DNA of 64,000 bases from Asterias rubens (taxonomy: Eukaryota): contig NC_047064.1 of NCBI RefSeq assembly GCF_902459465.1, positions 18,104,001-18,168,000 of the forward strand, read 5' to 3'. The position numbers and the translations under genes were made by a program. The notes under the pieces are model-generated. The model was not told the DNA's origin. It saw only the letters and a program-made list of their open reading frames with translations, and made no database searches. Shown one piece after another: positions 2-64,000 of this stretch (position 1 is its first letter; each line of letters opens with the position of its first letter).

Positions 2-15362
<15,361 letters not shown>

Positions 15363-46000: not shown

Positions 46001-49000
46001 GTGACCTTAGATTTTTTAGAGTGCAGTTTTAAAAGCGGTTTGAAATATTGCTACCAAAGGAGACTGCTTAGGAAAAAAGTCTGGTAATGTTATTTGCAAT
46101 TATTTAGAAATGTGTCAATGAGTGCTATAGAACATAGAGTACAGATCAATGTTTCTAAAAGTATTTTCTTATAGCTTTTCAAAGCATATTTACCTCTGTT
46201 AGAACATTTTAACCAAAGTTGGTTGTGATTGGGTTCACATTCAAATGTCTGTCTTTACAATCTTATTTATCCCAGCTAACTGCGTTGATCCTGGCACACC
46301 AGCGTTTGGAAGTCAAACAGGGACGTACAAACATTCTGATGTCCTCTTCTTCAACTGTACGGTAGGCTACGACCTGATTGGAGCTGATCAACTAACTTGT
46401 AACAATGGAGTATGGACCAACGACATACCAACCTGTCAATGTAAGAAGAATTCCTGCCAATTGAACATTTTTCCCCCATTTGTTATGAAAACAACCCGAA
46501 CAACGCGAAACAAATTCACAAACGAGGACCTATAGGTCTTTCTTGTCAAGCTTATTTCCTCAATACTATCATGGCGCACACCATGAACTCTTCTTTGTTG
46601 TCAGTTTGTAGGTTAAACAAACAATTTTCAGCAGACTATTTTGAAAGTGCTTTTTAAGATGACATAGTTATGTATGTAGCCACTATAAACATTTAAATTA
46701 ACACCTCTCTTGTTATCTTATCCACAGTCAATTAAGAGTACTGAAATAATTAATCCTGACAGTCCAATTACTTGGTATTTTCTCATGACTAGACGTGCAG
46801 CCGCCGCTTGAGCCAACAGTAGCCCCAACACCTGCCGTTAATGAGTTGACTACCATTGACAGTCTGACCACATCAGCAGTAGAGGTTGTTGCAACTACTA
46901 AAGAAGAGTCAACAACTAAAGAAGCTACCACAGCAGAGTCAACCACTATAGAAGCTGAAGATGAATCAACTACAGTGGTAGTACAAGATTCTACAACCCT
47001 TGAAACGGAAGTTGAAGTCACAACAGAAGCCCCAGAACAAGAGTCAACTACTCAAACAGAACTTGACACAACTACATCTGCAGAAGAAGAGTCAACAACC
47101 CTTGAAACTGAAGTTGAATCAACTACAGTGGTAGTAGAAGAGTCAACAACCCTTGAAACTGAAGTTGAAGCCTCAACAGAAACCCCAGAACAAGAATCAA
47201 CTACTCCTGAAACAGAAGCTGAATCAACTACAGTGGTAGTAGAAGAGTCAACTACCCTTGAAACTGAAGTTGAAGCCTCAACAGAAACCCCAGAGCAAGA
47301 ATCAACTACTATTGAAACAGAAGCTGAATCAACTACAGTGGTAGTAGAAGAGTCAACAACTCCGGAAGCAGAAGGTGAAGTAACTACAGCAATAGACCAG
47401 GAATCAACAACTGCTGAAGTAGAGGATGACTCAACTACCGACAGTGAGACAGAGAACTTCACAACTGAGAATCCATCAGACGAGATCACTACGGAAACTG
47501 ACTTCACCATTCTCCCCGAACAACCGTTTACAACAGATGTGGACACAACTGAAAGTCAAACTAACAGACCACCAAGACCACCGATGTTATTCTGCCCACC
47601 ACTATGGCTCCATGTGCATGGCATGTATCGGAAAAAATACAAACAAGGGGATAAGGTCAGCTTCTCCTGTAAACCTGGTTTTACAGTTGTGGGCCCCAAG
47701 TGGATTGTCTGTTATGATGGGGAGTGGAGTGGTCCAGTGCCTGAATGCATACGTGAGTACCATTTTCAGACTAGAGAGCTGTATTCCATTAGTTTGCCAA
47801 GCTGGAACTCTCCACTACATCTTAGATCTTGTCTTTGTGCCACAAAATTCAAATCTCCTCTCAAAACTTATCTTACATCACTGGCTTTCAAGGACTAGTT
47901 TTGATTTGTCTGTTCTTTTCTTTTCTTTTGGGTTTTACTGCACCTTGAACACCCCGCTGGGTGGATATGTTCACATTACAAGTCTTTTTTTATTTATTTT
48001 TTATTAAGCTGTGACAGCCCAAACTATTATAATAGCTAGAAATATTATCCGTAGTTCGTCATGACAGAACATTTCAAAACTTGTAATTTTGGCTTCTAGA
48101 AAAAAATAACTGCTTACCCTACTCACTTTAATTTTCAATTTAATCATGCGTACTCTGAATTCTATTTTACAGCCTCTTGTGAATATGTTCCCCCTGCTCC
48201 TGAACATGGCGAGAGTCAATTCATACCATCTGAACGTCATCCTTGGGACGGCTTCAATTGGGAGAACTTACCACACCATAATCCATTGGAAGAACTATTT
48301 CCAGACTTGGACCTTGCTTGGAGTCGAACCCTACTTCGCGTCTTTTTGAGCTTGCAAGATGGTCGACTCACATGGGTTGAGATATTCAAGCTGTTCTTAA
48401 ATGGAATTCATCTCCGGCATGAAAACTGGCCGTGGAGTGCCGAGACACCTCTAGATCTTCCCAACATTCCATGGGCAGAGTTGCACCGGTTGATGCCAAA
48501 TGGCATTCCACTCGGAGATGGTAGTTACTTCGGATGGACTGAAATGTTTCTACAATTCCCAGATGGGGTTCCCTTTGGAGGTGATCTCCCATGGATGATG
48601 CCTGGGAAAGGGAGTCAAGGTGGAATGTCTTGGGAATCCGAATACCTGAGCAGTGTTTTTCCTGGAGATGAAGACGATGACAGTGTTGGTACGATTCCTT
48701 CTGAGGAGCTTCCATGGGAAAGTATGCTTCAGATGTTCTTCCAGTGGCTTTCAACTGAGTTGGGTGATTCTAGTCTCCTTCCTGGTGGGGCAGGTGGTGG
48801 TGTGATACCTGGCGATGGTGATGGTTCAATTGATCCCACAACTGTTGGAATAGCAACGCTCCTCGAACTCCTAAATGGGCAAATTCCATCCATAGATTTC
48901 GGAACTATTCCATGGCAGCAACTGTTGAGCCTGTTTCCCGATGGACTCTCATTCGCGGACGGACAGATTTCATGGGACCTAATTCTCCAGGTGTTTAACT

Positions 49001-52000
49001 TTTTGGGTGGCTCTGGGAATGTGATGCCTTGGAGTGGTGAAATAAGCGATGGTTTCTTCAATACAGGAGGTTTCGTCGTGACATGGGAAGACCTGTATCA
49101 ATTAACTCCACAAGGTATTCCATTGGGAGACACTACAATTCCGTGGGAAGTCCTTTTCGCATTGTATCCAGATGGTCCTCCACCTCTAGACGACTGGTCA
49201 CAGTTCATACCAACTGGTGGATTCGTTTTGCCTGGTGGTGGGTCCGGCAGTAATGACGTAACTCCCTGGAGTGGTGTAGTACCTGTGGGCTACCTAGACT
49301 TTGGAGATGGCATCATTACATGGGAAAATGTGTACCTATACTTACCAGATGGAATTCCAGTCGGAGACAAAACTGTACCATGGGAAAAGGTATTCGAGGC
49401 GTTTCCAGATGGGCCGCCAGCAACTGAAACTTTATACAGCTTTTTAGCCACTGCTGTAGAAGATGACAGAGAAGAAATATCCCCCTGGAGTGGTGTAGTA
49501 CCTGTGGGCTACCTAGACTTTGGAGATGGCATCATTACATGGGAAAACGTGTACCTTTACTTACCAGATGGAATTCCAGTCGGAGACAAAACTGTACCAT
49601 GGGAAAAGGTATTCGAGGCGTTTCCAGATGGGCCTCCAGCAACTGAAACTTTATACAGCTTTTTAGCCACTGCTGTAGAAGATGACAGAGAAGAAATATC
49701 CCCCTGGAGTGGTGTAGTACCTGTGGGCTACCTGGACTTTGGAGATGGCATCATTACATGGGAAAACGTGTACCTATACTTACCGGATGGAATTCCTGTT
49801 GGAAACAAAACTGTACCATGGGAAAAGGTATTCGAGGCGTTTCCAGATGGGCCTCCAGCAACTGGAACTTTATACAGCTTTTTAGCCACTGCTATAGAAG
49901 ATGACAGAGTTGACATAACTCCTTGGAGCGGTGTAGTACCTGTGGGCTATCTAGACTTTGGAGATGGCATCATTACATGGGAAAACGTGTACCTTTACAT
50001 ACCAGATGGAATTCCTGTCGGAAACAAAACAGTACCATGGAAAAATGTATTTGAGGCGTTTCCAGATGGGCCTCCAGCAACTGAAACTTTATACAGCTTT
50101 TTAGCCATGGCGGCTCAAGGAGATAGTATGATTCCCGAAGATGACAGTGCAGCAGTAAGTCCCTGGAGTGGTGTCATACCTATAGGTTACCTGGACATTG
50201 GGGATGGTAGCTTAACGTGGGAAACGCTGTTCCAAGGTCTACCGAAAGGTTTTCCATTTAGAAATGGAACCATTCCATGGGGAAAAATATTTATAGCTTT
50301 TCCAAATGGTCCACCACCAGTTGAAGATTTGTTGATGTTTTTAAGGATGTTTCAAGCAGGGAATGATATGAATCTTGGAGATGACATCGATGATGTCCGA
50401 GGAGTTCCATGGAGTGGCGTCATACCTAGAGGTTACCTAGACATTGGGAATGGTAATGTTACATGGGAGGACCTTTACCAGCGAATACCAGAAGGCCTTT
50501 CATTTTTTAATTATACGGTCCCGTGGGAATCCTTGTTCAATACATTTCCAGTGGGCCCGCCACCGATTGAGGACTTGTTAAACTTTTTCAGGATGGCTCA
50601 AGCAGGCAGTGGTGAAGTCCCGGTAAGACCATGGCGTGGTGTTATACCAGTAGGTTACCTTGGTATTGGGGACGGTAATGTAACATGGGAGGACCTCTAC
50701 CAACGTAAACCAGATGGCCTTTCATATGGAAACTATACGGTCCCATGGAAAAGGATGTTTAAAACATTTCCAGATGGTCCACCATCAGTCGAAATTTTGC
50801 TGTTCTTCCTCAGAATGGTCCAAGAAGGAAGTGGTATGACTACTGAAGAAATTCCAGTAAGACCGTGGAGTGGTGTAATACCTGAAGGGTACTTGGATAT
50901 CGGGGACGGTACTCTAACATGGGAGAGCCTCTATCAGCGCATACCAGATGGCATTCCATTTTTAAATTATACAGTCCAATGGAGAACCTTGTTCAAAATA
51001 TTTCCAGATGGCCCGCCACCGATTGAAGACTTGTTGAACTTTCTCAGGATGGCTCAAGCAGGCAGCGGTGAAGTCCCAGTAAGACCTTGGCGTGGTGTTA
51101 TACCTGAAGGTTACTTGGATATCGGGAATGGTAATGTTACGTGGGAGGACCTCTACCAGCGGCTACCAAATGGCCTTCCATTTAGAAACTACACAATTTC
51201 ATGGAAAAGATTATTCACAACATTTCCAGATGGTCCTCCGACTGTTCAAGAGCTGGTCAGACTGGTTATGAGAAGAATGACTCCTGGCAGAGCAGAGGAC
51301 AGTGAAGAAATGCAGAGTTCATGGAGTGGTATAGTTCCACAGGGCTTGTTGAATTTAGGGGATGGCAGATTGACATGGGAAGAGCTTTATCAGGCAATGC
51401 CAGAGGGTCTTCAAATTGGGAACTATACCTTTCCATGGAAGTTGTTATTTATGATGTTTCCAAATGGACCGCCACCTCCTGAGGATTGGTTGGAGCTTGC
51501 ACAGGAGGTAAGCGTGGGTCATGTTGCCTCAATTGATGAGACTCTGGATCAACAGAATGGAGGAGAAACCACCAGTGCTATAGCTCCATGGACAGGCCTG
51601 ATCCCTCAGGGATTACTCAATATTGGAGATGGTAGTATAACATGGGAAGATCTTGCTCTACTGATGCCAGACGGTCTGCAATTTGGAAATAATAACGTTG
51701 CATGGGGAGTCCTGTTTATGATGTTTCCAAATGGTCCTCCACTTGATGCTGCTGATTGGTCAGGTTTTTCACCACTTAGTCAGGCTGGTAATAATAATCC
51801 TCTGCAAGAAGTGATAGGACATATTGAGTCGTTTCCATGGGCAGAACTTCTGGATGTAGTCGTACCTTGGTTGCCATTTGGAGATGCTTTAAACGTTGAA
51901 ACTCCAGGAGACCAAGGGGGTTCTGGAGTGGAAGCACCTTGGACAGGGGTTGTTCCACCAGAACTTTTTAATTTTGGAGATGAAACTTTGACTTGGGAAC

Positions 52001-55000
52001 AGCTAATGCAGATTATGCCAAATGGTATACCTTTTGCTGATGGAATCATTACATGGGAAGCTTTGGTTGAGCTCTTTCCATCTGGAATACCTTCTGAACT
52101 TCAAGAGTGGCCATGGGCATTCGAAATGGCTCCCCATGGTGGTTATGAATCGTCTAGCAGTCACAGCAGTGTATCTGGAAATCCAAATCAGTTAGCAGAG
52201 GTAATTCAACCGCTTCTTGACCACTTGTGGAGCGGCCAAATAGTGATTGATTTAATATCGCACTTTGGAGCAGGTGAAGTACCTTGGGAACCAATGGCCT
52301 TACTCTTCCCGAATGGCATTTCTTTTGGAGAGGGGGTACTGTCATGGGAAGTACTGAAAGAGATGTACGAAAGCAGTATTCAACCAGGAGAAGGTGGAAT
52401 GGTGCCCGGCAATGGAGGCGGAAGTGCAATGAGACCAGAAAATGGAGAGGAAAGTGGTATGAGGCCTGGCAGTGGAAATGGTAATGGAACAGGACCTGGG
52501 AACGGTATGATACCTGACAACGGGAATGGCATGATGCCAGATGGCGGAGGTGGCATGGGGCCTGGAGACAAAGATGAAAATGCACCGAACTTCTGCGTCA
52601 GGCTGCCTTTCGGTAAATTTTCACCATCACGACGCGGAGGAGGGGGTGGTTTGATGCCAGAAGATGGTAATGGCATGATGCCAGATGGTGGAATTGACAT
52701 GATGCCAGATGGTGGATTTGGCATGATGCCAGAAGATGGTAGTGACATGATGCCAGATGGTGGAATGGGCATGATGCCTGGTGGAACGGGCATGATGCCA
52801 GACGGTGGAACAGGCATGATGCCAGACAGTGGAACGGGCATGATGCCAGACGGTGGAACGGGCATGATGCCAGATGGAGGAACGGGCATGATGCCAGACG
52901 GTGGAATGGGCATGATGCCAGACGGTGGAATGGGCATGATGCCAGATGGAGAAATGGGCATGATGCCAGAAGATGGGATTGGCATGATGCCAGAAGATGG
53001 GATTAATGGAATCCACAATGCCTGGAGAAGAGCACCTGCGGAAGGCGATTCAGTGAAATACTCATGTTCACATGGCTTTGTGATGATCGGAACACCCTTG
53101 CTAACCTGCACATGTCAAGGAGTCTGGGATAATCTACCACCCAGGTGTAAAGGTATCTAAACTTTTTGACACTTATAATGTGTGCGAATTTAATTTCGGA
53201 AGAATAATATAATTAGTTATCCAGAAATTTAGCTTAAATCCATATGAAAATCTGGCATTTTTTGTTGACTTGTCTTGATCTTGTTTGGAGTGATAGCATT
53301 TTTATTTACTTTACCAAATGTAAATTTTGAGCGCAACTCTGCCACATTACCTACTAATGTAAACCAACTTAAATATGGTTGTTATTCCACGTAGGTGTGT
53401 TCACCACAACAACTACCCCAGGTTACACCCAGCCAATTGCAGAGCTGACAACAATAGATACACCACAAGGTAAGCTTCTAGTCATCCAGTGAATTTCAAT
53501 GTATGTATATTTTTATAAAACAGTCATACGCCTAAAATTGAATCCAAGACACCGAAAGCAATTGCCGTAGAGCCCTATGCTTTTTGATGTAGTGCCCTTT
53601 AGAGTTTCAGTACAAATTTACTTTTTCCTCAAAGAAGAAAAGCATTACATAGAGATAACTGGTGTGAGTTGCCAGAGGAAAAGGATATCACTATTCTGGC
53701 CTCTTTCTATAATGAAGGTCTCCCATAATGATGTAATGTATAATGTTATCTAATTGACCAAAATGAGAGAAAATATTTAGAGCATTTGTTCTGTCTGTCT
53801 TTTCAAATTTTGATAAGCGAGTGTCATTTATCATTTATATTTGCAGACCCATGCTCTTCAAACCCTTGTGCTGAGAGAGCAAACAGTCAATGCATTTCCG
53901 AAGGTGGAGCTTTCAAATGCCCCTGCCTACTATCTTTCTCCGAGTCCAATGGCCAGTGTACTGGTAAGAGAAGCTTTGCATTTTTTCCAAGTATCTTTCC
54001 TGAAGGGTTTTCAAGAGTAATTATTAGGCAATGGGTTGTTCCGTTAATTCCTGTACATGTTACACTGCTAAACGACTCAAATACTGGAGCATAGCCAGAG
54101 GCCAGTAATTTTCATGTCAGGCCACTAAACTTTTGACCAGATGCAAGTCAGATGGTCTTGCGTTTTTTAATAGAAGAATAACCCAACACCTCACTGACGG
54201 ATGATGCCCACGCCTACATTCGTGTGTACCGTATCCGTATGGACTTTAAAGGGGGTAACCCTGTTTCAGAACCAGAAGTATGTGGCAACGGCACAAAGTA
54301 GATTGTAGCCCACACCTTGAAGTGGCCTCTAGGCATTGTGTGTCTGGCGACTTGACTAAAAATAAACATTTTAAAGAATGGGTGTTTTCCATTTTGTCCA
54401 CAAATTGTTTTGCATTGACGGTGTATTGGGCTGCATTGGTAAGTTATGGACATTTAATCCATTGTGGTGTCTGCTTCACTCACATTTTATTCAATTGTAT
54501 ACACAACAAATCTGTAGCAATTGCTAATATAATTATTATGTTCCCATTCCAGAATCAAAAGCATTCAGTGGCAATCTCAGAGTGACTGGGTTAGGCGGTC
54601 AGGGAGTTGAGTTTAGTGAGGAACTGGCAGATCCGTCCACAGAGGCTTTCCAGATGCTTGCTCAGGGCATGGAATCCATAGTAAGATATTTTCAAAGGTT
54701 TGATCAAACCTTTATCTTATATTTTTATGTTAATATATTTCAAGGCAAAGTATATCTTTTGTTTTTGGAACTGTTTGTGTTTTATTTTAATAGCACTAGA
54801 CACTATTGGTAATTACCCCCAAAAACTTGTTTGCATAAAAATTTAATTCTTGGTAATGAGCAATGGAGAACTGTTGAAAGTATAAAACATAATGAGAAAC
54901 GGCTCCCTCTGAAGTTACCCTATTTTTGAAAAGAGGTAATTTCTCACTCAAATAAGAAACGACTTCAGGGCAAAAGCCTTTGACTATGCATCTGTGAAAG

Positions 55001-58000
55001 CTAACACACAAAGTTGTGCAACACACAAATTTGTGCAACAAGTGTTTTTTCTTTCATTATTCTCTTGCAACTTCGATGACCAATTGAGCCCAAATTTTCA
55101 CAGAATTTTTATCACTATACTAGCAAAGAACCCAATGGAGAGAAGACAGGGAAAGATGCTTCGATTTTAGATTTGGGAGGAAAAGCCCAGGGAAAATATT
55201 CCAGGGAAAACCCACCATAGGGTATGGACTGGAAACCCAATCCAAATAGTGCTCTCAGCGGGACTGAACAGAGCGAGGAAAATATACCACTATGGAAGCC
55301 AACCCTATTGCCCCTTTTACACTTTGGTTTAATAAAATAATATGTTTTTCTTTTTCAGATTGATGATATATACATGAACGGTAGCCTGTCAGACAATTAT
55401 CTTGGAAGTACAGTCACTGGTTTCTCAAATGGTTCGATTGTTGTTGACTACATTGCCAAATTCACAGAGGAGAATGGCACAATAACCAATTCAAGTGCTG
55501 TAGATTCAGCTTTCAAAGCAACTTACATGGAAAGTGTCGAAAGCGGAAGCCTTAATGTCACAGTAGATGTTGCAGCCAGTGGAGTAACAGGTATAACATC
55601 AGTTTTAAAGGCAAAGCATACCTTTGGTTTTTGGAGCCGTATAATTGTTTAAATCATATATAAATGTACACTTATCGGGAAAACTAACCTGTGAAGATTT
55701 CATTTCAACAGATGGTTGCTTTTTTGAGATATTGATGAAAATCGTGACTAGTTATGTCTCGAGGCAAGAAGAACAATCGGTAATTGGAATACACATTATG
55801 GATAAACAGTTCTCAGATTCAAATTTTGGGGCATAAAAACTTACACATTTTTACAAAACAACATTACACCTGTCTCTTTAGATCATGAGATGACTTGTAT
55901 ATATGACAATTGAGGTATGGTATATTATGTAAGATAAATAACAATGGTACACAGATTCAAGACTACTGAAAATAAATTGTTGCATGATGCATGATGCTAT
56001 AGTGCAAACCTCACCTCCAACTATGCAAAGTTTCATATCCTACATCCGTATGGACTGTAAAGGGGGTAACCCTGATCAGCCCCAGGAGTAGGTGGCAACA
56101 ATAGTTGATTTGTAGCCTACACCTTGAAGTGGCCTTTAAGCCTGGTGTGTCTAGTGTCTTACATAAAAAAACAATTGTTTGAATTGTACTCACGTTTTTT
56201 TTCATCTGTCTCTTAGATCTGGATGAGTGTCAATCAGCCAGCGACAATAATTGTGCTTCGGATGCAGAGTGTATCAACATAGATGGTTCATTCACTTGTA
56301 GGTGCAACTTTGGATTCGTCGATAACACCCCAGAATACCCAGGACGAGTCTGTGGTAAGATGACAGAACATTAAACTTTACCCGGGCTGATTCATTTTAT
56401 AATGTACAGGAAAGAAGCATCTGTTTCAGACAGGCGCTCCAGAGGCCCGCTGAACCAACTACTGAATTAAGTAAATTGAAAAGTGTGACGTCTGAAGCAG
56501 TTAGAAGTGACTGGACATGCTAGAAGTCAAAAGATCGACTGTTGCTTTTGTTCGGAGCGACTCAGGAGCGTCTTGGTTTCAGACGTTGATCTTGTCATGA
56601 GCCCAACCAATGTAAATGTTTAAGTTTGGGTAGACCTACATGTAGAGTCGCTCCTAATCTATTTGGTTCGGCGCGACTCTGGCGTGCCTGTCTGAAACCG
56701 GTTGAACATCTTACATATTGTCACGTAGAATGTCGTGGCCGAGTGGTCTAGTTCACCAGACGCAAGCTATGGTATTCTTGGCAGCAGTGTGGGTTTTAAT
56801 CCTGGCAATGACACTTGTGCAGTTGAGCAAAGCACTGACCATATTTGCTTCTTAAAAGGTTGGGCAGGTAGTGCATTCTGCACTACCAACCAGGCTCCTA
56901 GCGGATGATCATGATGATACCCAAGCCAACATTCCCACAGACTGTGAATGGGGGTTACCCTGTTTCAGGCCCTGGAGTATTAAGTGGCATTAGCCCCTGG
57001 GGAGCACTGCCCTGGTGGCAGTTAATTTGGGTCGATAGCCCAAATCAGTTAGGTGTAGTACTCATACCTTGAAGTGGGCCGTTCGGCCTTGTGATGTCAG
57101 GCAATCTCTCATACCTACCATTATGTTTTTAGCTGGTAGTATCTTGTACAGTCAGTTACAGGACGAATGACTTTTGACTGACACTCCCAAACAAACCTTA
57201 TTGACAAGTAAATGGAGATCTAGGATCTGAGGCATTGCATGGTGAGGTATCAATGTACATTTGGTTTGCGGTAACACCATGTGTGTATCTACTTGCCAGG
57301 TAGAGTTGTTCTTAGGGAACTGTCTTGCTTTATTCTACTGCCGCGGAGAAGATAAACGGAGGTTCGGGAGACTTCTCAGTTCTGAAAAGAACTGTCCTTC
57401 TTTTTAACTATTACCAGGGCGGATGGTATAGAAATTACTACTACTTTACTACTACTTTAGCTTACAGGATCGTAATTAACTGTACTGCCGCAGAGTCAGT
57501 TCAGAACTGGTCCCAATGTTATATGGAGATCGCCAAAGTTAGGGCTAGATAGCTCATCAGTTTGTAAGGCACCAGCATGTTAACCTGGAGATCGCAGGTT
57601 CAAATCGGGCTAATTAAATCCGGCTCTAGTAGATTTGTCTTTGTTCAAGCCAAAATGTTCAGTCAGTTTTCCTTGTTCAGTAGTTATGTTTATTAAACTT
57701 GTTATTTTTTTTCAATATTTAAACTGTGTTTACTTTTTCCTTCCAGAATTACTGGTAGTCGCCACAACAAGCCCCTCATACGTTGAGTTCACAACAGATG
57801 TTGAGTTCGTAACAGATGTTGAGTTCGTAACAGATGTTGAGTTCGTAACAGATGTTGAGTTCGTAACAGATGTTGAGTTCTCAACAGATGTTGATGACGA
57901 CAACTTCAAAATGACAACGATGACCAATGAACAAGAAATGACGGAGGCTTTTGAGGAAGCAACTATCATGAGCGAAATACTGTTCACAACACGAGATATT

Positions 58001-61000
58001 GTTGACGAGGCCACCGAAGGTGTAACTGAGAGTCCGGAAGAGGTAATATTATATTTATTGCCCAAACCGACTGACCGAACAGCCATGCAATTACAAGAAA
58101 AGGATAATACACAATATTCATATTGCCAATATACATGTAATATCTCTTGGGAATGCTCTCCCACTGAACTAGTAGACACTCTCTCCAGCTTCAAGACCAA
58201 CTTGAAAACTCATTTGTTCAGTCGTAGCTTAAAGTACCGTCATTAAGCAGAGTTCTTTTCTATGCGCCAGGAGTGTCTTCCTAACAGATATGGCGCACTA
58301 CAAATGTCCATTATTGTATTACGTACATAAAATTGAAGCAAACATTACAATTAATTAAATAAATTACAATTGGGAAAAAGAACAATAGCATTATAAATAT
58401 ATTTATAGGTAAGGACAACACAGGCCGAGCCCGAAGTAACAGAGGAACAGAAATCTCGGACAACACCTGTCGATGAGTCAGAATCGACAACACCAGAAGA
58501 GGAAGCCGGCGTCGAGCCAACTGAAGGAGTGAGTGAAGAGCCAGAGTTGGAAATGACGACAAAAAGGGAGCCTGAAGTAACACACGAATCTGAGTCTACG
58601 ACAAAACCTGCTGACGAGTCTGAATCGACAACATCAGCAGAGGTTGAACCCACAGAGCGTGTGACTGTTAAGCCAGAGGTGGAGAGTACAACTGAAGGCA
58701 GGTCTGAAGTGACGCTAACAAGAACGAGTAAACCTGAGGAAAATACCACCAAAGCAGTTTCAGTTGCACCCAAAAGCCCTGAAGTTACAGGACAGCCTAT
58801 TGGTAAATATCAATGCAACAATGTTTTCCTCTACATTGAATGCTAATTAAAAAAAAAAAAAAAAAACACTCGATCAACATTCAATTTATAAGGGGCCAGT
58901 CTAACAGTCTTTGCTCATAGCGCTGTACAATAGGCTTTTGAAAAAACGGTGAGAATTAAGCAAAGATTTAAAATTGGCTAATGGATTAGATGCCTGATGT
59001 TCTGAGGAAGATGATTCCACATCCTTGTTACTGCTGCAATAGAAAAGGCACGATCCCCCTCAACTGCACTTGGTTCTTTCAATGTGAAAGTTTAGGAACA
59101 GGAGGGCAGATTTCTTACAGGTTCTTTGATGGACAATATTTACCACTGCCAGGATTGCAGCAGACGCTGACTGCTGACCTTTTTTAAACCATTTGATCAT
59201 TTCAATGCTGTGTAAATATAGATACGTACAAACAAAAACGTATCTGACATTAATGTTTCTCAGATCAAAATTTCCAGGGGGATAAACATTTTGTTCTCAT
59301 AATCACATTATTTTAAAGTGAAATAGTTCTCAGATTATTTTATACTATCGAAAGCTGCAGCAGTTCTGTCTAAGTAATTCCATGTTTCAAGATTGATTAC
59401 CAAACGTATACATGTACAGACCCTCTTTACAAGACATTTATGACTACAAATGTATATCCTTTACTTTTCAGATCCGTGTTTCTCAGATCCGTGCGCTGGC
59501 AAAGCAAACAGTGAATGCATCTCCAAGGATGATGGGTCGTACACATGTTCCTGCATAGCTCTTTACTATGAATCAAACGGCCAGTGTGTAGGTAAGAATG
59601 AACACTGTCTGAGTAATTTAAAACCTCGACTTGAGTAAGTGGTGTTTGAAGCTTTGGATGGTGTGGAGAATAAGAGTAACTATAAATATAAAAATGAATA
59701 GTAGATTTGCGGGTACATCCATGTGTAAATCTCTTTTGAGGGAGATTGGTCGCGATGTTCGTAACAGTATACTATCCTCGTCTTCAGGAGAATGAGCATT
59801 TTATGCTATCAAAAATTTTGATGCTAATATTTGTTGAGTACTTATTACCAAACGTGTTCAGTGCTTCTAAGCTGGGCCCAATTTCATAGAGCTGCTTATA
59901 AGCACAAAATTCTTGCTTAGTAAAATCAGATTACCGGCCAAGACTCCACTCATTTGGTATGCTAAGTAAACAACAGCTAAATACCATTCACAAGCAATGT
60001 ACGATTGCATGAAATTTTTGCCAGTAACATGTGTAAAATAAGCGGCCTATTTTCGTGCTTAACGACACTGGACACTATTCATGCTATTGGTAATTCTCAT
60101 TTGGTGTATCTCAACATATGCATAAAATAACAAACCTGTGAAAATTTGAGCTTGATTGGCCGTCACAGTTGCGAGATATTAATGAAAGAAAAAAACACCC
60201 GTGCAACACGAAATTCTGTGTTTTTGGATGCTTGATTTCGAGACCTCAATTCTAAACTTGAGGTCTCGAAATCAAATTTGTGGAAAGTTACCTCTTTCTC
60301 GAAAACTACGTCACTTCAAAGGGAGCCGTTTCTCACAATTTTTAATACTATCAACCTCTCCCTATTACTCGTTACCAAGCAGGGTTTTATGCTGAATTTC
60401 TTTTTGGAGTAATTACCAATAGTGTCCACTGCCTTTAAGCAACATTTTTGCTTAAGCAGCTCTATGAAATGGCCCCAGCCCTTTGATTGGGCACAGGCTG
60501 CCAGTAATACTTACATGTGCATCATGATGTTTATTTCTGTGGTGTACATTTTAGCTTCCTCAACATTCAAGTGCCGTCTACGTGTCACTAGGATTCAGAC
60601 CTTGCAGGCAGAGTTCACTGCTGAGCTGGCAGACCCAACGTCTCAGGATTTTCAGTCAATGGCTGCCGACATGACATCTGTCGTAAGTAACAAGATATTT
60701 TAATTTTATAACGCTTTACACTGGCGAAAAATCTACAAATAGATAAATTAAGATACATCAGAAAAAAAAGATTAAATTACCAAGTCAGTGAGTGGCAAGG
60801 AAGAACAGGTGACCAGCACCTCTACAAAGCCGTCCTGCCACAAAAGAATGTCTCGTTAGACCAACCCTCAGTTTAAAAAAAACACCATCCCTCAGATAAA
60901 AAAAATAAAAATAAAAATAAAAGGGGAGGGGGGTCTTGAAGGCAGAACTGACAATTCTGAACAACAACAAGAGCAGCAACAATGTGACACCCAAGTGCAA

Positions 61001-63708
61001 ACATCATCCACTGAGAAGTCAGGTACAAATTTCTCCTATATACATATTATATTGAAGCAGAAGAGTCTTAAATAAAAATTATAGGTCAAATTCACTTTGT
61101 TGTAAAGCAAAGGTTTTTGAGCTAAGGGACACTTTTATGAAAACCGCTTGTGGCTGCTGTGGTCTCTAAACGGTTAAGAAAAACATAAACCAACCTAACT
61201 GTTGATTTGATATTCGTTAAAAAAAATTAAATTTTCCAGACATTGTAAAATTGTTAGTTATGTTGAGGCCTGAAAGACATGTCTGTCATTTCCTTTTTAG
61301 ATTGATAGTATATTCATGGGGAGCCGTATGTCAAACCAGTACCTTGGCTGCACCATTTTTGGATTTTCAAGCGGCTCAATCATCGTGGACTACATTGCTC
61401 ACATTGACGATGTCGAACCAACCAATTCCACTGTGGTGGAGTCTGCATTCACAGAGTCTTACATGCAAAGTGCAAACGACGGGAGGCTTAACGTCACTGC
61501 TGATGTTGCAGCTAGCGGAGTCACAGGTAATGAGGCCATGTGTAAAATTGATGGCTTTCAATGGCAATGCTGCAATTCCAGAGCAAAACAGCCTAAAGCC
61601 TTGTTCATAGTTCCTGTGATTGTGAGTCAATATGTTGACGTCACAAATTGACAACGAACAATTCGCAGCAGTTGAGTTGTGCTCAGTTCTCAACAACAGA
61701 GTTGTGACCTCAAGTTCACGTCAAATTCGCTTCGCATTCGCAGTTGCAGGATGTACATGTATGAACCGGGCTTAACTAAAAAATGTTGGTTTCCTAGTTG
61801 TTTTTTTTGGGGGGGGGGGTAAATTGAAGGCGTTTTTTCTATTTCAAAGTTTCAAAGGCAAACTATGTTTGGGTTTGAGTATAATATATCTTGGTCTCTT
61901 TATACACACTTTCATCCGTTTTATTAAAGGCAAAACAGCTTTATCTCTGTACTTTTCTCAAATTGTAACTTTTCAAGTTTTCTCAATTTGCCACACTCCA
62001 TCTCTAGATTTTGATGAGTGTCTATCCACCACGACCAATGATTGCTCGGTCAATGCCAGCTGCATCAACATTGAGGGAGCGTTCACTTGTGAATGCCACT
62101 CTGGACTTGTTGATTTGGCCCCGACAAAACCAGGACGATTCTGCGCAGGTAAGATTTTCTATATTTTGACTCTTTCAAGTAGAGAGATAATAAGTAGGAT
62201 TTGAAACTTTGCATGGCGGAAGTATAACTGAGGTGAATATACCTCTCTCCTTTATGAGCTATGTGGTTCTGAAAAGAACTGGTGGTTAAGGATCGGACCA
62301 TACTGATCAACACACAGGACCAACGGCTTAACGTCCCAAAGACGAAGCAACATTGGTGAAATGTCTTGCTTAAGAACTTGTGTCAAAAAACCCTTCTGTT
62401 AATGATAGTGTACCCAGTTTTTTTTTAAGGTGCATAATGTAGCACAACACACTGGACCTGCTAGAGTACAAAGCAAAAATGTTTCTAAAAGTATCTACTG
62501 CAGGACACCAGCGTCAAGACTGGGACTCAAACCCACATTCCGCTAACTGCGAGTGGAATCAACAGAGAACGACTCGAGTGTGTTTGACCACAACTTTTCA
62601 CTGTTAATAGAACTTAGTGGGTTTTTTTTCTTTGAAGTTCACACCAAGCAAGGCTAAAAGCCACTCTTGGTATGGGGCTACAAGAAGAACAATCAATGAA
62701 GCGTAAAAAAACTTGGGGGAGCTGAAGGTAATAAATTGATATTAGGTAGGAATTGATATTCCTCTTAAAACAATCTAGATTGTAGGATGGAGGGAAGCAT
62801 GCATCAGGCAGGGAGTTCCGATAAGATGTAGTACGTGGAATAAAGCTGTGTGAATGGCGGCTTGTACTACATCTCAGCAGATAAAGAGTGTATGGCTATG
62901 AGAAGAAGCAGAAAGTCTAGTTTTACGCTAACAAACTCTGATAGAACGAACTGTGTTTTATTCTTTGCTCCAGCTCCTCAACCTAAAGTGTGCGACAATC
63001 AAGCTGATATAGACTGCTCACCGTATGCTGCCTGTTACGACACTGACACACGCCCAGAGGGTTATAGCTGCCAGTGCCTCTCTGGCTTCCGTGATCAATC
63101 CCCAAGTATCAGCCTCATGCCGGGTAGAGTCTGTGAAGGTAAAATAGAGCTTGTTATAAAGAAGCATCTTTTTAGCTTTGATTTTGGCCATTGGCTTTCG
63201 CAAGGAAATCACATAGCTTTAATGATAATAGCAACAATAATATTAATAATAATGGACATTTGTAGTGCGCACTATCTGTCAGAAAGACATTCCAGGCGCT
63301 TAGAAATAAATTTTGCTAACGACGGTACTTAAAGCTTTGGCTGAACAAATGAGTTTTCAAGTTGGCTTGAAGCTGAAGAGAGTGCTACTAGTCTGAGGTT
63401 CAGTGGGAGAGCATGCCAAAGAGATGGTCCAGCATTTAATAAGGAACAGTCTCCCCAAGTGTCCTTAGATCGACGGGATATTAAGGAGCATAGTGTTTGT
63501 AGAGCGAAGCTGTCTGGTAGAAACACTTTGCTGCGTTGAATCCTGGATGTATCTTGGAGATGTACCATGTTTAGGAGTAGAACCATTTGGCTCAGAATTT
63601 TCATTCAACTGTCACTTTGTTTCTGTCTTTAGAAATTTGCCCTTCCAGTAACTGTTTCAACGGAGGTTCCTGTGTGAGTGTTTATGAGACTGGAGAAACA
63701 ATATGCAG
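33869..63708 (+). CDS. Giant mosaic extracellular, probably membrane-tethered, mucin-like protein: sushi x9, giant repeat exon with split sushi, EGF-SEA-cbEGF x2, further EGFs; 23 exons, 3'-incomplete
   Basis: All 23 exons have AG/GT boundaries and join in one frame (9520 nt); domain signatures read directly from translation. Confidence 0.88.
36477..36779 (+). mobile_element. tRNA-derived SINE, near full length (related copies at 25676-25860 and 56728-57105; 3' parts at 54205-54365, 56035-56172, and 1530-1700 on the minus strand)
   Basis: A-box TGGTCGAGCGG, B-box GGTTCGGATCC, shared 3' body GGGGTAACCCTG...CACCTTGAAGTGGC, A-rich tail. Confidence 0.85.
38188..38566. mobile_element. Kolobok-like MITE nested in an older related element (about 38050-38770)
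   Basis: Perfect TIRs; TTAA at 38184-87 and 38567-70. Confidence 0.88.
39537..39707 (+). CDS. Sushi/CCP exon 2 (DCSDPGAPTDG...CIDGSWSLPNPTCS)
   Basis: 171 nt, phase 1-1. Confidence 0.95.
40216..40386 (+). CDS. Sushi/CCP exon 3 (DCGDPGTPASG...CEGGSWSRDVPTCL)
   Basis: 171 nt, phase 1-1. Confidence 0.95.
40834..40998 (+). CDS. Sushi/CCP exon 4 (NCVDPGTPGNG...CSDGSWSNSIPTCE)
   Basis: 165 nt, phase 1-1; absent from the ORF track. Confidence 0.95.
41080..41352. mobile_element. 149-bp Harbinger-like MITE inserted in reverse orientation into a copy of itself
   Basis: Inner copy 41141-41289 has AGGCC...GGCCT termini and TAA duplicated at 41138-40 and 41290-92. Confidence 0.8.
41440..41655 (-). mobile_element. 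tRNA-derived SINE of a second family, degenerate (related piece near 62300-62600)
   Basis: Minus-strand head GTTGCCGAGCGGTTAAGAGCACCGAAT; body GGGACGTTAGGCCGTTGGTCCCGTG. Confidence 0.65.
43122..43286 (+). CDS. Sushi/CCP exon 5 (DCVDPGSVVNG...CRSGAFDGVLPVCY)
   Basis: 165 nt, phase 1-1; conserved Trp replaced by Phe. Confidence 0.92.
44147..44311 (+). CDS. Sushi/CCP exon 6 (DCVDPGTPESG...CDAGSWSNGLPTCL)
   Basis: 165 nt, phase 1-1. Confidence 0.95.
44760..45070 (+). mobile_element. Degenerate RTE-clade LINE 3' fragment
   Basis: Interrupted translation KKWRWADH...ARWACETT...DW*TAQDRVKWR resembles the RTE ORF C-terminus. Confidence 0.72.
45190..45354 (+). CDS. Sushi/CCP exon 7 (NCTDPGTPEFG...CANGDWSNSVPVCK)
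   Basis: 165 nt, phase 1-1. Confidence 0.95.
46276..46440 (+). CDS. Sushi/CCP exon 8 (NCVDPGTPAFG...CNNGVWTNDIPTCQ)
   Basis: 165 nt, phase 1-1. Confidence 0.95.
46793..47752 (+). CDS. Thr/Glu-rich mucin-like stalk (105-bp, 35-aa repeats) followed by sushi domain 9
   Basis: 960 nt, phase 1-1; ESTT-rich; ends FCPPLW...FSCKPGF...CYDGEWSGPVPECI. Confidence 0.92.
47101..47400 (+). repeat. Coding 105-bp tandem repeat (ESTTVVVEESTTLETEVEASTETPEQESTT...)
   Basis: GAATCAACTACAGTGGTAGTAGAAGAGTCA at 47116, 47221, 47326. Confidence 0.9.
48173..53152 (+). CDS. Giant 4,980-bp exon: sushi N-half, Trp/Pro/Gly repeat region, GMMPDG array, sushi C-half
   Basis: ttttacag acceptor at 48172, AAG|GTATCT donor at 53152, open frame of 1660 codons, phase 1-1; includes ORF 48286-53160. 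Confidence 0.9.
49027..52140 (+). repeat. Coding tandem repeat, 13 units of at least 219 bp (73 aa) beginning PW[S/R/T]G
   Basis: Unit starts at about 49027, 49264, 49483, 49702, 49921, 50161, 50407, 50629, 50863, 51085, 51319, 51586, 51937; units 2-5 are near-identical with exact 219-bp period. Confidence 0.93.
52651..53010 (+). repeat. Coding 24-bp minisatellite, ~15 x (G)MMPDGGx
   Basis: GGCATGATGCCAGA recurs at 24-bp spacing. Confidence 0.95.
53395..53469 (+). CDS. Short Thr-rich linker exon (VFTTTTTPGYTQPIAELTTIDTPQ)
   Basis: 75 nt, phase 1-1; ELTTID motif shared with the start of the 46793 stalk exon. Confidence 0.85.
53847..53963 (+). CDS. EGF-like exon (PCSSNPCAERANSQC...CPC...SNGQCT)
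   Basis: 117 nt, phase 1-1, six Cys. Confidence 0.93.
54553..54680 (+). CDS. SEA domain 1, N-terminal exon (SKAFSGNLRVT...FSEELADPSTEAFQMLAQGMESI)
   Basis: 128 nt, phases 1-0; F-x-x-E-L-x-D-P-x-S/T-x-x-F SEA motif. Confidence 0.92.
55359..55590 (+). CDS. SEA domain 1, C-terminal exon (GFSNGSIVVDY)
   Basis: 232 nt, phases 0-1; GSIVV autoproteolysis-type motif. Confidence 0.92.
56217..56354 (+). CDS. Calcium-binding EGF exon (DLDECQSASDNNC...CINIDGSFTCRC...PGRVC)
   Basis: 138 nt, phase 1-1; D-x-D-E-C and C-x-N-x-x-G-S-F-x-C. Confidence 0.94.
56421..56700. mobile_element. MITE, TIR GTTTCAGACAGGC
   Basis: Imperfect ~40-bp inverted termini. Confidence 0.7.
57747..58042 (+). CDS. Acidic Thr/Glu stalk exon with (TDVEFV)n repeats
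   Basis: 296 nt, phases 1-0; 18-bp tandem repeat. Confidence 0.85.
58409..58802 (+). CDS. Thr/Glu/Pro-rich stalk exon (VRTTQAEPEVTEE...EVTGQPI)
   Basis: 394 nt, phases 0-1; an in-frame alternative acceptor is possible at 58424. Confidence 0.82.
59472..59591 (+). CDS. EGF-like exon (PCFSDPCAGKANSEC...CSC...SNGQCV)
   Basis: 120 nt, phase 1-1; paralogue of the 53847 exon. Confidence 0.93.
60063..60434. mobile_element. Kolobok-like MITE nested in a CTGGGCCCAATTTCATAGAGCTGCT-type MITE (59872-60478)
   Basis: TTAA at 60059-62 and 60435-38; host TIRs CTGGG(C/G)C(C/A)ATTTCATAGAGCTGCTT on both sides. Confidence 0.82.
60555..60682 (+). CDS. SEA domain 2, N-terminal exon (SSTFKCRLRVT...FTAELADPTSQDF)
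   Basis: 128 nt, phases 1-0; paralogue of the 54553 exon. Confidence 0.92.
61301..61526 (+). CDS. SEA domain 2, C-terminal exon (GFSSGSIIVDY)
   Basis: 226 nt, phases 0-1; paralogue of the 55359 exon. Confidence 0.92.
62008..62148 (+). CDS. Calcium-binding EGF exon (DFDECLSTTTNDC...CINIEGAFTCEC...PGRFCA)
   Basis: 141 nt, phase 1-1. Confidence 0.94.
62765..62935 (-). mobile_element. Degenerate CR1/L2-type LINE 3' fragment
   Basis: Minus-strand remnant PRTTSYRNSLPDACFPPSYNLDCFK resembles the PRT..WNSLP...SYNL..FK terminus. Confidence 0.6.
62974..63138 (+). CDS. EGF-like exon (VCDNQADIDCSPYAAC...YSCQC...PGRVCE)
   Basis: 165 nt, phase 1-1, six Cys. Confidence 0.93.
63225..63590 (-). mobile_element. 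Degenerate L2-type LINE 3' end
   Basis: TWGDCSLLNAGPSLWHALPLNLR resembles GDRAF..AGP.LWN.LP..LR; followed by a GCGCACTACAAATGTCCATTATTATT tail. Confidence 0.72.
63633..63708 (+). CDS. First part of an EGF-like domain (ICPSSNCFNGGSCVSVYETGETIC)
   Basis: 76 nt, phases 1-2; C-x-N-G-G-x-C; remainder lies beyond the window. Confidence 0.85.
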
Positions 63709-64000
63709 GTTTGTCGGTCATTTTATTGTGAAGATTTAAAGTCAAGGGATAGAACAGTTGTGTTTTAAGAGTAAGATCATAGATTGGTTTTTGTCAAAGT
63801 ACACAATGTAGTGCTGATATGCAAAAATTATGGATACACTGTCTACTTGTTGAGAAAACATCAACAACTGTCAGATATTTTCAAATCCAAACGCGTTCTG
63901 AGGTCACAGCAGTGTTGTCACAGTAGCATTTAACACAAACGCAAACCAACCCTCAGAAATCTGAGAAACGATTCATGCATGAATTATTTCTCAGATTCAA

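What the first reader, a model, noticed from the sequence alone, without database searches (positions are those of the whole stretch)
48173..53152. Sushi domain apparently split by a ~1,600-residue insertion inside one 4,980-bp exon
Seen: the exon is phase 1-1 like every sushi exon in this gene. It opens with a sushi N-half (SCEYVPPAPEHG, Cys at 48178) and closes with a sushi C-half (GDSVKYSCSHGFVMIGTPLLTCTCQGVWDNLPPRCK, Cys2 at 53065). Cys1 to Cys2 is 1,629 residues versus about 25 in the sibling sushi exons. The exon has only six Cys: the four sushi ones, one at NFCVRL (52594) and an extra one in TCTCQG. Established: CCP modules pair C1-C3 and C2-C4. Inference A: a single sushi exon expanded internally, so a C1-C3 disulfide would clamp the whole repeat region as a giant loop, and the two spare Cys could pair to staple the Met-rich array. 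Inference B: NFC is the true C1 (157-residue gap) and the N-half is an orphan. Either way a domain interrupted on this scale is unusual.
Basis: partly seen in the sequence, partly recalled or inferred. Interest (0 to 1): 0.88.

Follow-up and report, generated by a model that had tools for sequence, protein, structure and literature searches.

The report
Sushi domain split by giant insertion
A sea-star cell-surface mucin-like gene has one ordinary-looking "sushi" (CCP) exon that has been blown up from about 165 to 4,980 bases, so the two halves of a 60-residue domain lie about 1,600 residues apart; this is real, transcribed and conserved in three sea stars, but whether the halves still fold together is unproven.

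Summary
Window 48173-53152 (+) is one uninterrupted 1,659-codon, phase 1-1 exon. Both splice junctions are seen in transcript contigs of six public runs, and no contig shows internal splicing.

Pfam recognises only the last 35 residues as Sushi (profile 22-56 of 56). The opening Cys segment cannot be recognised by profile. Its exon geometry, however, is that of six sibling one-CCP exons: the exon starts 5 nt before the C1 codon and ends 4 nt after the C4 codon.

The Acanthaster planci genomic exon (3,009 nt) has the same geometry and the same six Cys. The Patiria miniata protein keeps both halves.

The insert is about 14 full and 3 partial copies of an unassigned ~57-73-aa Trp/Pro/Gly repeat, then a conserved Cys block, then a GMMPDGG-type array. 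It evolves under purifying selection (pN/pS about 0.16).

Best reading: a single CCP exon expanded internally, at or just after the hypervariable-loop position, before these asteroids diverged. The six conserved Cys (C1, mid-Cys, C2, C3-x-C, C4) probably form three disulfides that clamp the insert as loops on the C-half.

Which Cys fills the C1 slot is unresolved; both AlphaFold2 runs were uninformative. This is a new variant of a known domain and is moderately interesting.

The scan had noted this stretch and gene before, on this same DNA.

The parts
48173..53152 (+). Whole expanded CCP exon: 4,980 nt, phase 1-1, 1,659 full codons from 48175.
   Evidence: Open frame. Splice sites. Junctions and contiguous transcript contigs in runs X1 and X3-X7. 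GC is 44-46% against 36-40% in the flanks.
48175..48231 (+). CCP N-half: S-C1-EYVPPAPEHGESQFIPS. C1 is at 48178, 3 residues after C4 of the preceding CCP.
   Evidence: Same 5-nt offset from the exon start as six sibling CCP exons. Conserved as TCDYIPPAPSNG / TCDYIPSAPNNG in Patiria and Acanthaster. Aligns column for column with the sibling N-halves. Not significant by profile scoring.
48232..52395 (+). Trp/Pro/Gly repeat region: 17 units found, about 14 of them full 57-aa cores (consensus PWSGxIPxGxLxxGDGxxTWExLYQxxPxGxPxGNxTVPWExLFxxFPxGPP). It includes a 219-nt unit repeated 3.9 times at 95% identity at 49264-50107.
   Evidence: Iterative HMM on the exon. Tandem Repeats Finder. Alignment A4. 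No Pfam, PDB or ESM Atlas relative. pN/pS about 0.16 against a close relative's transcripts.
52582..52629 (+). Conserved mid-Cys block APNF-C-VRLPFGKFSPS, with Cys at 52594. This is the rival candidate for C1.
   Evidence: C, R, P, F, G, F and P are invariant in the three species. It is the only Cys inside the insert in the window and in Acanthaster.
52652..53000 (+). Met-rich octapeptide array (GMMPDGGx, 24-nt period, 14.7 copies).
   Evidence: Tandem Repeats Finder. GMMPG-type motifs are conserved but shorter in Patiria and Acanthaster. One copy-number difference (33 nt) appears in the related species' contig.
53038..53152 (+). CCP C-half: EGDSVKYS-C2-SHGFVMIGTPLLT-C3-T-C-QGVW-DNLPPR-C4-K. 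C2 is at 53065, C3 at 53107, the extra Cys at 53113 and C4 at 53146.
   Evidence: Pfam Sushi hit at aa 1624-1658, profile 22-56 of 56, 24.5 bits. C-x-C is conserved in all three species and rare elsewhere: 3 of about 3,000 CCPs.
46789..47752 (+). Preceding exon region: Ser/Thr/Glu-rich mucin stretch plus the complete CCP9 (C1 at 47593, donor at 47752|47753). The 5' end of this exon was not mapped.
   Evidence: The transcript joint to 48173 is.
53395..63736 (+). Downstream exons of the same gene: mucin linker, then two EGF-SEA-EGF_CA modules and further EGF exons. The TM segment and tail are expected beyond the window, or were not mapped.
   Evidence: The next exon start was found from transcript loose ends. 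Pfam SEA and EGF_CA hits. Orthologue architecture.

Best explanation
The exon is a genuine, constitutively included coding exon of a very large asteroid type-I cell-surface glycoprotein. The architecture, read from the Patiria orthologue and from window exons, is: signal peptide, 8 CCPs, a mucin stretch, CCP9, this module, more mucin, EGF-SEA-EGF modules, a TM segment and a cytoplasmic tail.

The exon descends from an ordinary one-module CCP exon. About 1,000-1,600 codons were inserted and amplified inside it, between the conserved aromatic residue that ends the hypervariable-loop region and the 'EGD-x-V-x-Y-x-C2' strand. This happened before the window species, Patiria and Acanthaster diverged.

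The insert has three parts. The first is a novel Trp/Pro/Gly repeat array under purifying selection. The second is a short conserved Cys block. The third is a Gly/Met/Pro-rich array.

My proposal for how it works is inferred, not shown. The two CCP halves still pack into one CCP-like module, with C1-C3 and C2-C4 disulfides. The extra Cys at C3+2 bonds the mid Cys. The repeat array (about 1,470 residues) and the Met-rich array (about 155 residues) would then hang as two disulfide-closed side loops from a compact clasp in the stalk. They would be displayed laterally, and tension running along the stalk would bypass them.
For: Shown:
- The 1,659-codon frame is open and the splice sites are canonical.
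- Both junctions and contiguous coverage appear in six runs, and no contig shows an internal joint apart from one 33-nt repeat-copy difference.
- The 5-nt/4-nt exon geometry matches six sibling CCP exons. The Acanthaster genomic exon L002:9600-12608 has the same geometry.
- The window and Acanthaster each have exactly six Cys, and the same six are conserved in Patiria.
- The linker from the previous C4 to this C1 is 3 residues, within the 3-8 residues typical of CCP linkers (PMC2276370).
- N-half plus C-half align end to end with 16 sibling CCPs, with no missing or duplicated columns. In that alignment the extra Cys is an inserted column at C3+2.
- The C-half is a significant Pfam Sushi match.
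- C-x-C at the C3 position is rare in CCPs: 3 of about 3,000.
- The insert has pN/pS about 0.16.
- The hypervariable loop is the known length-variable, flexible site of CCPs (PMC2276370; the long ordered loop in helminth TGM, PMC11845725).

Inferred: the disulfide pattern, the packing of the two halves and the mechanical role.
Against: - Neither a profile of the sibling CCPs nor a general CCP profile scores the N-half above random Cys-primed windows from the same exon (z = 0.7-2.0).
- Pfam sees nothing in the N-half.
- AlphaFold2 gave pLDDT about 30 for both halves in the 1,132-residue Patiria construct. The canonical CCP9 control in the same run reached only 42-63, so the test is uninformative rather than negative.
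- The mid-Cys block is also strongly conserved and shares a [FY]-[IVS]-P-[SR] motif with the N-half, so it could occupy the C1 slot instead.
- Only three species (plus one metagenomic fragment) are available, and no uninterrupted ancestor was found.
- The Patiria exon structure was not checked at the DNA level.
Confidence: 0.55

Rival explanations
1. Reader's Inference B. The mid Cys (52594, block C-VRLPFGKFSPS) is the working C1. The real module would then be a CCP whose hypervariable loop carries only the Met/Gly-rich array: 157 residues from mid Cys to C2 in the window, 108 in Acanthaster and 62 in Patiria. The exon-initial N-half would be an evolutionary leftover, merely tethered to the extra Cys at C3+2.
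For: The mid-Cys block is the best conserved stretch of the last 200 residues. It has a C-x3-P-x-G-x-F pattern loosely like a short CCP start. In Acanthaster and Patiria it scores about as well as, or better than, the first N-half in the chimera test. A 60-160-residue loop is a much smaller departure from known CCPs.
Against: Exon geometry marks the first Cys, not the mid Cys, as the homologue of C1. In the alignment with siblings, the first N-half matches the conserved Pro, Pro, Gly and aromatic columns, while the mid block matches about one of them. AlphaFold2 on the mid-Cys-to-end segment did not fold the mid block onto the C-half (pLDDT 35-43), though that model is poor overall. An orphan N-half would not be expected to keep about 55% identity across these species.
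Confidence: 0.25
2. There is no reconstituted CCP at all. The two ends are vestiges of a disrupted module. The C-half is a small disulfide knot on its own, or is unfolded. The spare Cys make intermolecular disulfides (multimerisation, as in gel-forming mucins) or pair C1 with the mid Cys to close the repeat array.
For: No computational support for packing of the halves could be obtained. Half a CCP cannot be shown to fold. The gene sits in a mucin-like context, where intermolecular disulfides are common (established knowledge, not tested here).
Against: The C-half keeps every CCP hallmark (C2, C3, Trp, Pro-x-C4) at significant Pfam score in three species. The Cys count is even, and it is exactly six in two species. 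The about 1,470-residue repeat region has no other Cys in those two species, which suggests avoidance of disulfide scrambling around a defined pattern.
Confidence: 0.15
3. The long exon contains a facultative internal intron (an exitron). A minor isoform would splice the halves into a normal short CCP, so the split is an artefact of looking only at the long isoform.
For: Assembled contigs drop rare variants, so absence is not proof. The raw-read runs available (X8, X9) barely cover the exon.
Against: Contigs of six runs have no internal joint. Contigs of 1.1 kb and 2.7 kb lie gaplessly on the exon. The insert is under purifying selection and conserved in three species, so the long form is a functional product in any case. 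I saw no good donor/acceptor pair at the two half-boundaries by eye.
Confidence: 0.05

Closest known systems
CCP / Sushi / SCR modules (Pfam PF00084), e.g. complement factor H modules with variable hypervariable loops
   Same: Four homologous Cys positions, the invariant Trp, Pro-x-C4, one module per phase 1-1 exon, and a 3-residue linker to the previous module. The length change sits at or next to the known length-variable hypervariable-loop region (PMC2276370).
   Different: Known hypervariable loops differ by a few residues up to roughly ten. Here the interruption is about 1,600 residues, roughly 27 times the host domain. There are also two extra conserved Cys: the mid Cys and C3+2. Full-text searches for split or interrupted sushi domains returned nothing.
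Helminth TGM/HpARI atypical CCP domains with an expanded, ordered hypervariable loop
   Same: A CCP fold that tolerates, and makes functional use of, an enlarged hypervariable loop (PMC11845725; PMC5655542 was listed but not read).
   Different: Those loops are short ordered extensions within a module of about 80-90 residues, not a multi-repeat region with its own substructure.
Intradomain insertions in other small domains: the 6-Cys (s48/45) protein Pf41, and split PH domains (PLC-gamma, syntrophin)
   Same: A small fold is formed from two sequence-distant halves with a large segment looped out. Pf41 is an extracellular, disulfide-bonded example (PMC4587554; title seen, paper not read). The split PH domains are recalled from memory.
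   Different: Those inserts are roughly 100-400 residues and the assembled fold has been shown experimentally. Here the insert is 1,000-1,600 residues and assembly is unproven.
Transmembrane SEA-EGF receptors and mucins (nematode MUA-3/MUP-4; vertebrate MUC3/12/13/17 type)
   Same: Membrane-proximal EGF-SEA-EGF(-TM) modules with a G|S-I-V-V-type SEA motif and mucin-like Ser/Thr-rich stretches. MUA-3/MUP-4 proteins are the best non-asteroid hits to the C-terminal region.
   Different: The N-terminal CCP array, the split CCP and the Trp-repeat region have no counterpart there. Those hits are driven largely by EGF repeats, so this is an architectural resemblance and not shown orthology.

Membership tests
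CCP/Sushi module (PF00084) | Profile match above Pfam's gathering score | tested here: met
   24.5 bits against a cut-off of 20.7, but only profile positions 22-56 of 56 (aa 1624-1658). The orthologues score 29.1 and 37.7 bits.
CCP/Sushi module (PF00084) | Four framework Cys plus an invariant Trp between C3 and C4, within about 60 residues | tested here: not met
   C2, C3, Trp and C4 have canonical spacing. A C1 homologue is present but lies 1,629 residues before C2 instead of about 26. The residues are all there, but the contiguity requirement fails.
CCP/Sushi module (PF00084) | Recognisable N-terminal segment (C1-x-x-P...G...aromatic) | tested here: inconclusive
   It aligns column for column with the siblings, but does not beat random Cys-primed windows in profile scoring. 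Pfam also fails to cover the N-terminal 15 positions of the canonical CCP9, so this region carries little information.
CCP/Sushi module (PF00084) | One module per exon, phase 1-1, with boundaries just outside C1 and C4 | tested here: met
   5 nt before the C1 codon and 4 nt after the C4 codon, identical to six siblings and to the Acanthaster orthologous exon.
CCP/Sushi module (PF00084) | C1-C3 and C2-C4 disulfides and a compact beta-sandwich fold | not testable with these tools
   The AlphaFold2 models were too poor: mean pLDDT 43 and 36.6, with the control CCP9 at 42-63.
SEA-EGF transmembrane mucin / MUA-3-like receptor | SEA domain flanked by EGF domains close to a TM segment, plus mucin-like stretches | tested here: met
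   Two SEA domains, each split over two exons, sit next to EGF_CA exons in the window. Patiria and Acanthaster carry SEA, EGF and a TM-like hydrophobic stretch. The window's own TM exon was not located.

The most novel reading that the evidence does not exclude
A roughly 56-residue CCP fold is reconstituted from two halves separated by 1,000-1,600 residues. It is locked by three disulfides (C1-C3, C2-C4, mid-Cys to C3+2) into a 'double lasso' that displays a lineage-specific Trp-repeat array and a Gly/Met-rich array as closed side loops on a force-bearing SEA-type cell-surface tether. That would be the largest insertion relative to host-domain size that I know of in an extracellular disulfide-bonded module. 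At about 0.36 nm per residue it hides roughly 0.6 micrometre of contour length behind a single disulfide.
Probability: 0.4. Interest if true: 0.75.

Novelty: new variant of a known kind. Interest (0 to 1): 0.6.

Why it matters
CCP modules are textbook small, contiguous, one-exon domains. A conserved, expressed example whose halves lie about 1,600 residues apart would test how far domain insertion can go in a tiny disulfide-bonded fold. It would also give a natural scaffold for displaying very large loops. It introduces an unassigned Trp/Pro/Gly repeat family that, as far as these searches reach, is restricted to asteroids. For genome annotation, it shows that half-domain Pfam hits at the end of giant exons can be real: the NCBI Acanthaster model truncates exactly this exon.

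Tried and rejected
1. Chimera scoring. I joined each 12-20-residue window of the exon, with a forced Cys, to the C-half. I scored these against an HMM of 16 sibling CCPs and against a general HMM of 1,500 CCPs. The true N-half and the mid-Cys block fall inside the random distribution, so the motif gives no statistical support either way.

2. Pfam on the isolated N-terminal pieces and on the mid-Cys-to-end pieces. Only the C-half is hit.

3. AlphaFold2 on P0001:1700-1799 with 3 sequences gave mean pLDDT 43. AlphaFold2 on P0001:668-1799 with 6 rows gave mean pLDDT 36.6, and the control CCP9 was also poor. I ran no fold search on such models. The only recurring feature is a low-confidence helix / beta-hairpin / helix pattern in the Trp repeats (pLDDT 52-64).

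4. The exhaustive representative search with a profile that included the C-half was swamped by multi-sushi proteins. Only P0002, two fragments identical to the window (P0004, P0007) and one TARA metagenome fragment (P0105) were true repeat-region hits among the 150 listed. Weaker repeat relatives may be hidden below that list.

5. Word-indexed searches with the window exon, the Patiria repeat region and the Patiria C-terminal region found no orthologue outside Patiria and Acanthaster. No uninterrupted ancestor was found, and the length and word filters limit this search.

6. ESM Atlas, PDB sequences and Pfam for the Trp repeat gave nothing significant. An EF-hand-like reading of the GDGxxTWE loop was considered and dropped, because the calcium-ligand positions 1 and 3 are not conserved (read by eye).

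7. The raw RNA reads of the related species (X8, X9) barely cover the exon, so there is no read-level junction count.

8. The look-up of encoding contigs has no record for the Patiria protein, so its exon structure is unchecked.


Full report
**Observation**

Translating the window from 48175 gives 1,659 codons without a stop. The exon is bounded by ttttacag|CC at 48172/48173 and AAAG|gtatct at 53152/53153. The first Cys (aa 2) and the next framework Cys (aa 1631) are 1,629 residues apart. The sibling sushi modules of the same gene have 25-27 residues between C1 and C2. Pfam finds Sushi only at aa 1624-1658, matching profile positions 22-56 of 56 at 24.5 bits against a cut-off of 20.7.

**Transcription**

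Six public runs hold the exon as RNA-like contigs. X3-X7 are essentially identical to the window and X1 is about 96-98% identical.
- All six join the preceding exon to 48173. The true donor is 47752|47753 (ATAC|gtgagt), and the aligner's offset comes from a T>G difference at 47750.
- X4-X7 join 53152 to 53395 across a GT..AG intron. For X1 and X3 this junction is read from the contigs' loose ends, whose sequence matches the next exon.
- Depth is 0-4 in the upstream intron against hundreds to thousands in the exon.
- Contigs of about 1.1 kb (48173-49293) and about 2.7 kb (50078-52810) lie on the exon without gaps. Breaks occur only at the 219-nt and 24-nt tandem repeats, as expected of de Bruijn assembly.
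- The only internal joint is a 33-nt copy-number difference in the Met-rich array of the related species.

The exon is therefore included whole in the dominant transcripts. Assembled contigs cannot exclude rare isoforms.

**Exon geometry**

Six sibling exons each encode one CCP: 39537-39707, 40216-40386, 40834-40998, 44147-44311, 45190-45354 and 46276-46440. All are phase 1-1, start 5 nt before the C1 codon and end 4 nt after the C4 codon. The focal exon has exactly this geometry around Cys 48178 and Cys 53146. The first Cys follows C4 of the preceding module by three residues, inside the 3-8-residue range of CCP linkers (PMC2276370). This is the strongest argument that the first Cys is the homologue of C1 and that the extra sequence arose inside a one-module exon. 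By contrast, the preceding exon carries its mucin-like stretch in front of a complete CCP9.

**Orthologues**

The only full-length relatives found are Patiria miniata LOC119745597 (P0001, 2,598 aa) and Acanthaster planci LOC110974526 (P0002).
- In Patiria the segment 727-1799 begins TCDYIPPAPSNG... and ends ...SCTCDGVWDGLPPMCK.
- The Acanthaster protein model is N-truncated. The genomic locus L002 holds a single open exon, 9600-12608 (3,009 nt, phase 1-1). It has the same 5-nt/4-nt geometry, begins TCDYIPSAPNNG and has exactly six Cys.
- The conserved set is therefore C1, a mid Cys in the block P-x-x-C-[VL]-R-[FL]-P-F-G-[EK]-F-[IS]-P, C2, C3-x-C and C4.
- Patiria has two further Cys inside the insert.
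- C-x-C at the C3 position is rare: 3 of about 3,000 CCPs taken from 150 multi-sushi proteins, none with a partner inside the module.
- A TARA metagenome fragment (P0105, locus L001) carries related repeats.

**Where the interruption lies**

I joined the first 16 residues after C1 to the last 44 residues, in a local script only. The join aligns end to end with 16 sibling CCPs.
- Pro, Pro, Gly and the conserved aromatic residue of the N-half fall in the sibling columns.
- EGD-x-V-x-Y-x-C2 falls on the sibling (N/H)(G/A)D-x-V-x-F-x-C2.
- The second Cys of C-x-C is an extra column at C3+2.

Nothing of a CCP is missing or duplicated. The interruption sits right after the hypervariable-loop region, the part of CCPs known to vary in length and to be flexible (PMC2276370; a long ordered loop in helminth TGM, PMC11845725).

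**Limits of the sequence evidence**

Profile scoring does not single out the N-half. With a sibling HMM or a general CCP HMM, the real N-half and the mid-Cys block score within the spread of random Cys-primed windows of the same exon. Pfam does not detect either piece, and it also misses the first about 15 positions of the canonical CCP9. The motif itself is therefore weak evidence. Position, geometry and conservation carry the case.

**The insert**

- An iterative HMM finds 17 units between aa 49 and 1404, about 14 of them full 57-aa cores. The consensus is PWSGxIPxGxLxxGDGxxTWExLYQxxPxGxPxGNxTVPWExLFxxFPxGPP.
- Four nearly identical 219-nt copies at 49264-50107 show recent amplification.
- No Pfam, PDB-sequence or ESM Atlas relative was found. 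The best match, a motif in the CD73 C-terminal domain, has E = 0.43.
- The low-confidence AlphaFold2 model shows a recurring helix / beta-hairpin / helix pattern.
- The 40 differences listed against the related species' transcripts (of 85 reported) split 26 synonymous to 14 non-synonymous, giving pN/pS about 0.16. The insert is a constrained protein sequence.
- After the mid-Cys block comes a 24-nt array of 14.7 copies encoding GMMPDGGx. Patiria and Acanthaster have it in shorter GMMPG form.
- From memory, Gly/Met-rich sequence recalls the elastomer abductin and Cu(I)-binding Met motifs. I did not test either idea.

**Gene context**

Upstream lie CCP1-8 and the mucin+CCP9 exon. Downstream lie a mucin linker, two EGF-SEA-EGF_CA modules with G|S-I-[VI]-V-D-Y SEA motifs, and more EGF exons. 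The orthologues end in a TM segment and a conserved tail. The closest non-asteroid hits to that C-terminal part are nematode MUA-3/MUP-4-type receptors. This is an architectural resemblance driven largely by EGF repeats.

**Structure tests**

AlphaFold2 on the mid-Cys-to-end segment of Patiria (3-sequence alignment) gave mean pLDDT 43. On CCP9 plus the whole split module (1,132 residues, 6 rows) it gave 36.6. The two halves scored about 30 and the canonical control CCP9 only 42-63. Both runs are uninformative.

**Verdict**

Shown: a real, transcribed exon, conserved in three asteroids, in which the N- and C-terminal parts of one CCP are separated by 1,000-1,600 residues of constrained repeat sequence.

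Strongly inferred: it arose by internal expansion of a standard CCP exon.

Inferred only: the halves still assemble, with three disulfides closing the repeat array and the Met-rich array as loops.

The main rival is that the mid Cys is the working C1 and the first segment is only tethered. Under either reading the even, conserved six-Cys set argues that both ends of the repeat array are pinned to the C-half.

Noticed in passing
window 53744-56371 and 59444-62201: The window's gene has two EGF-SEA-EGF_CA modules, each SEA split over two exons, separated by mucin-like exons at 57.7-58.8 kb. The Patiria protein and the Acanthaster model have one SEA module. Both SEA domains keep a G|S-I-[VI]-V-D-Y autoproteolysis-type motif.
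   Followed up: partly
window 47750: All transcript contigs of the six runs read G where the assembly has T (Ile to Arg in the last full codon of the CCP9 exon). Patiria and Acanthaster also have Arg there. This is probably a polymorphism of the sequenced individual or an assembly error.
   Followed up: no
window 47819-47987 (intron): A short element in the intron is hit by many RNA reads and contigs whose flanks do not match the window. It is probably a dispersed repeat or transposon fragment.
   Followed up: no
L002 8588-12608 (Acanthaster planci DF978490.1): The NCBI model LOC110974526 starts at an internal Met of the giant exon. The genomic ORF extends upstream to the CCP N-half, and the mucin+CCP9 exon lies just upstream, so the public model is N-terminally truncated.
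   Followed up: yes
window 49264-50107: A 219-nt unit in 3.9 copies at 95% identity shows recent amplification of the Trp repeat. Short-read contigs break here, so the copy number in the assembly is not independently verified.
   Followed up: partly
window 48217-48231 and 52609-52629: Both the segment after the first Cys (QFIPSER) and the segment after the mid Cys (KFSPSRR; EFIPRFP in Patiria, EFIPRHP in Acanthaster) carry [FY]-[IVS]-P-[SR] in all three species. This may be chance, a partial duplication of the N-half, or two strands that pair. It is unexplained.
   Followed up: no
window 51963: One contig of run X6 leaves the exon at 51963 into unrelated sequence, while another contig of the same run spans that point. 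It is probably an assembly chimera.
   Followed up: no
L001 (TARA metagenome scaffold, 863 nt): An ocean metagenome contig encodes a 252-aa open frame with divergent copies of the same Trp repeat and the GVSELIGLVSG block. It presumably comes from another echinoderm, whose identity is unknown.
   Followed up: partly
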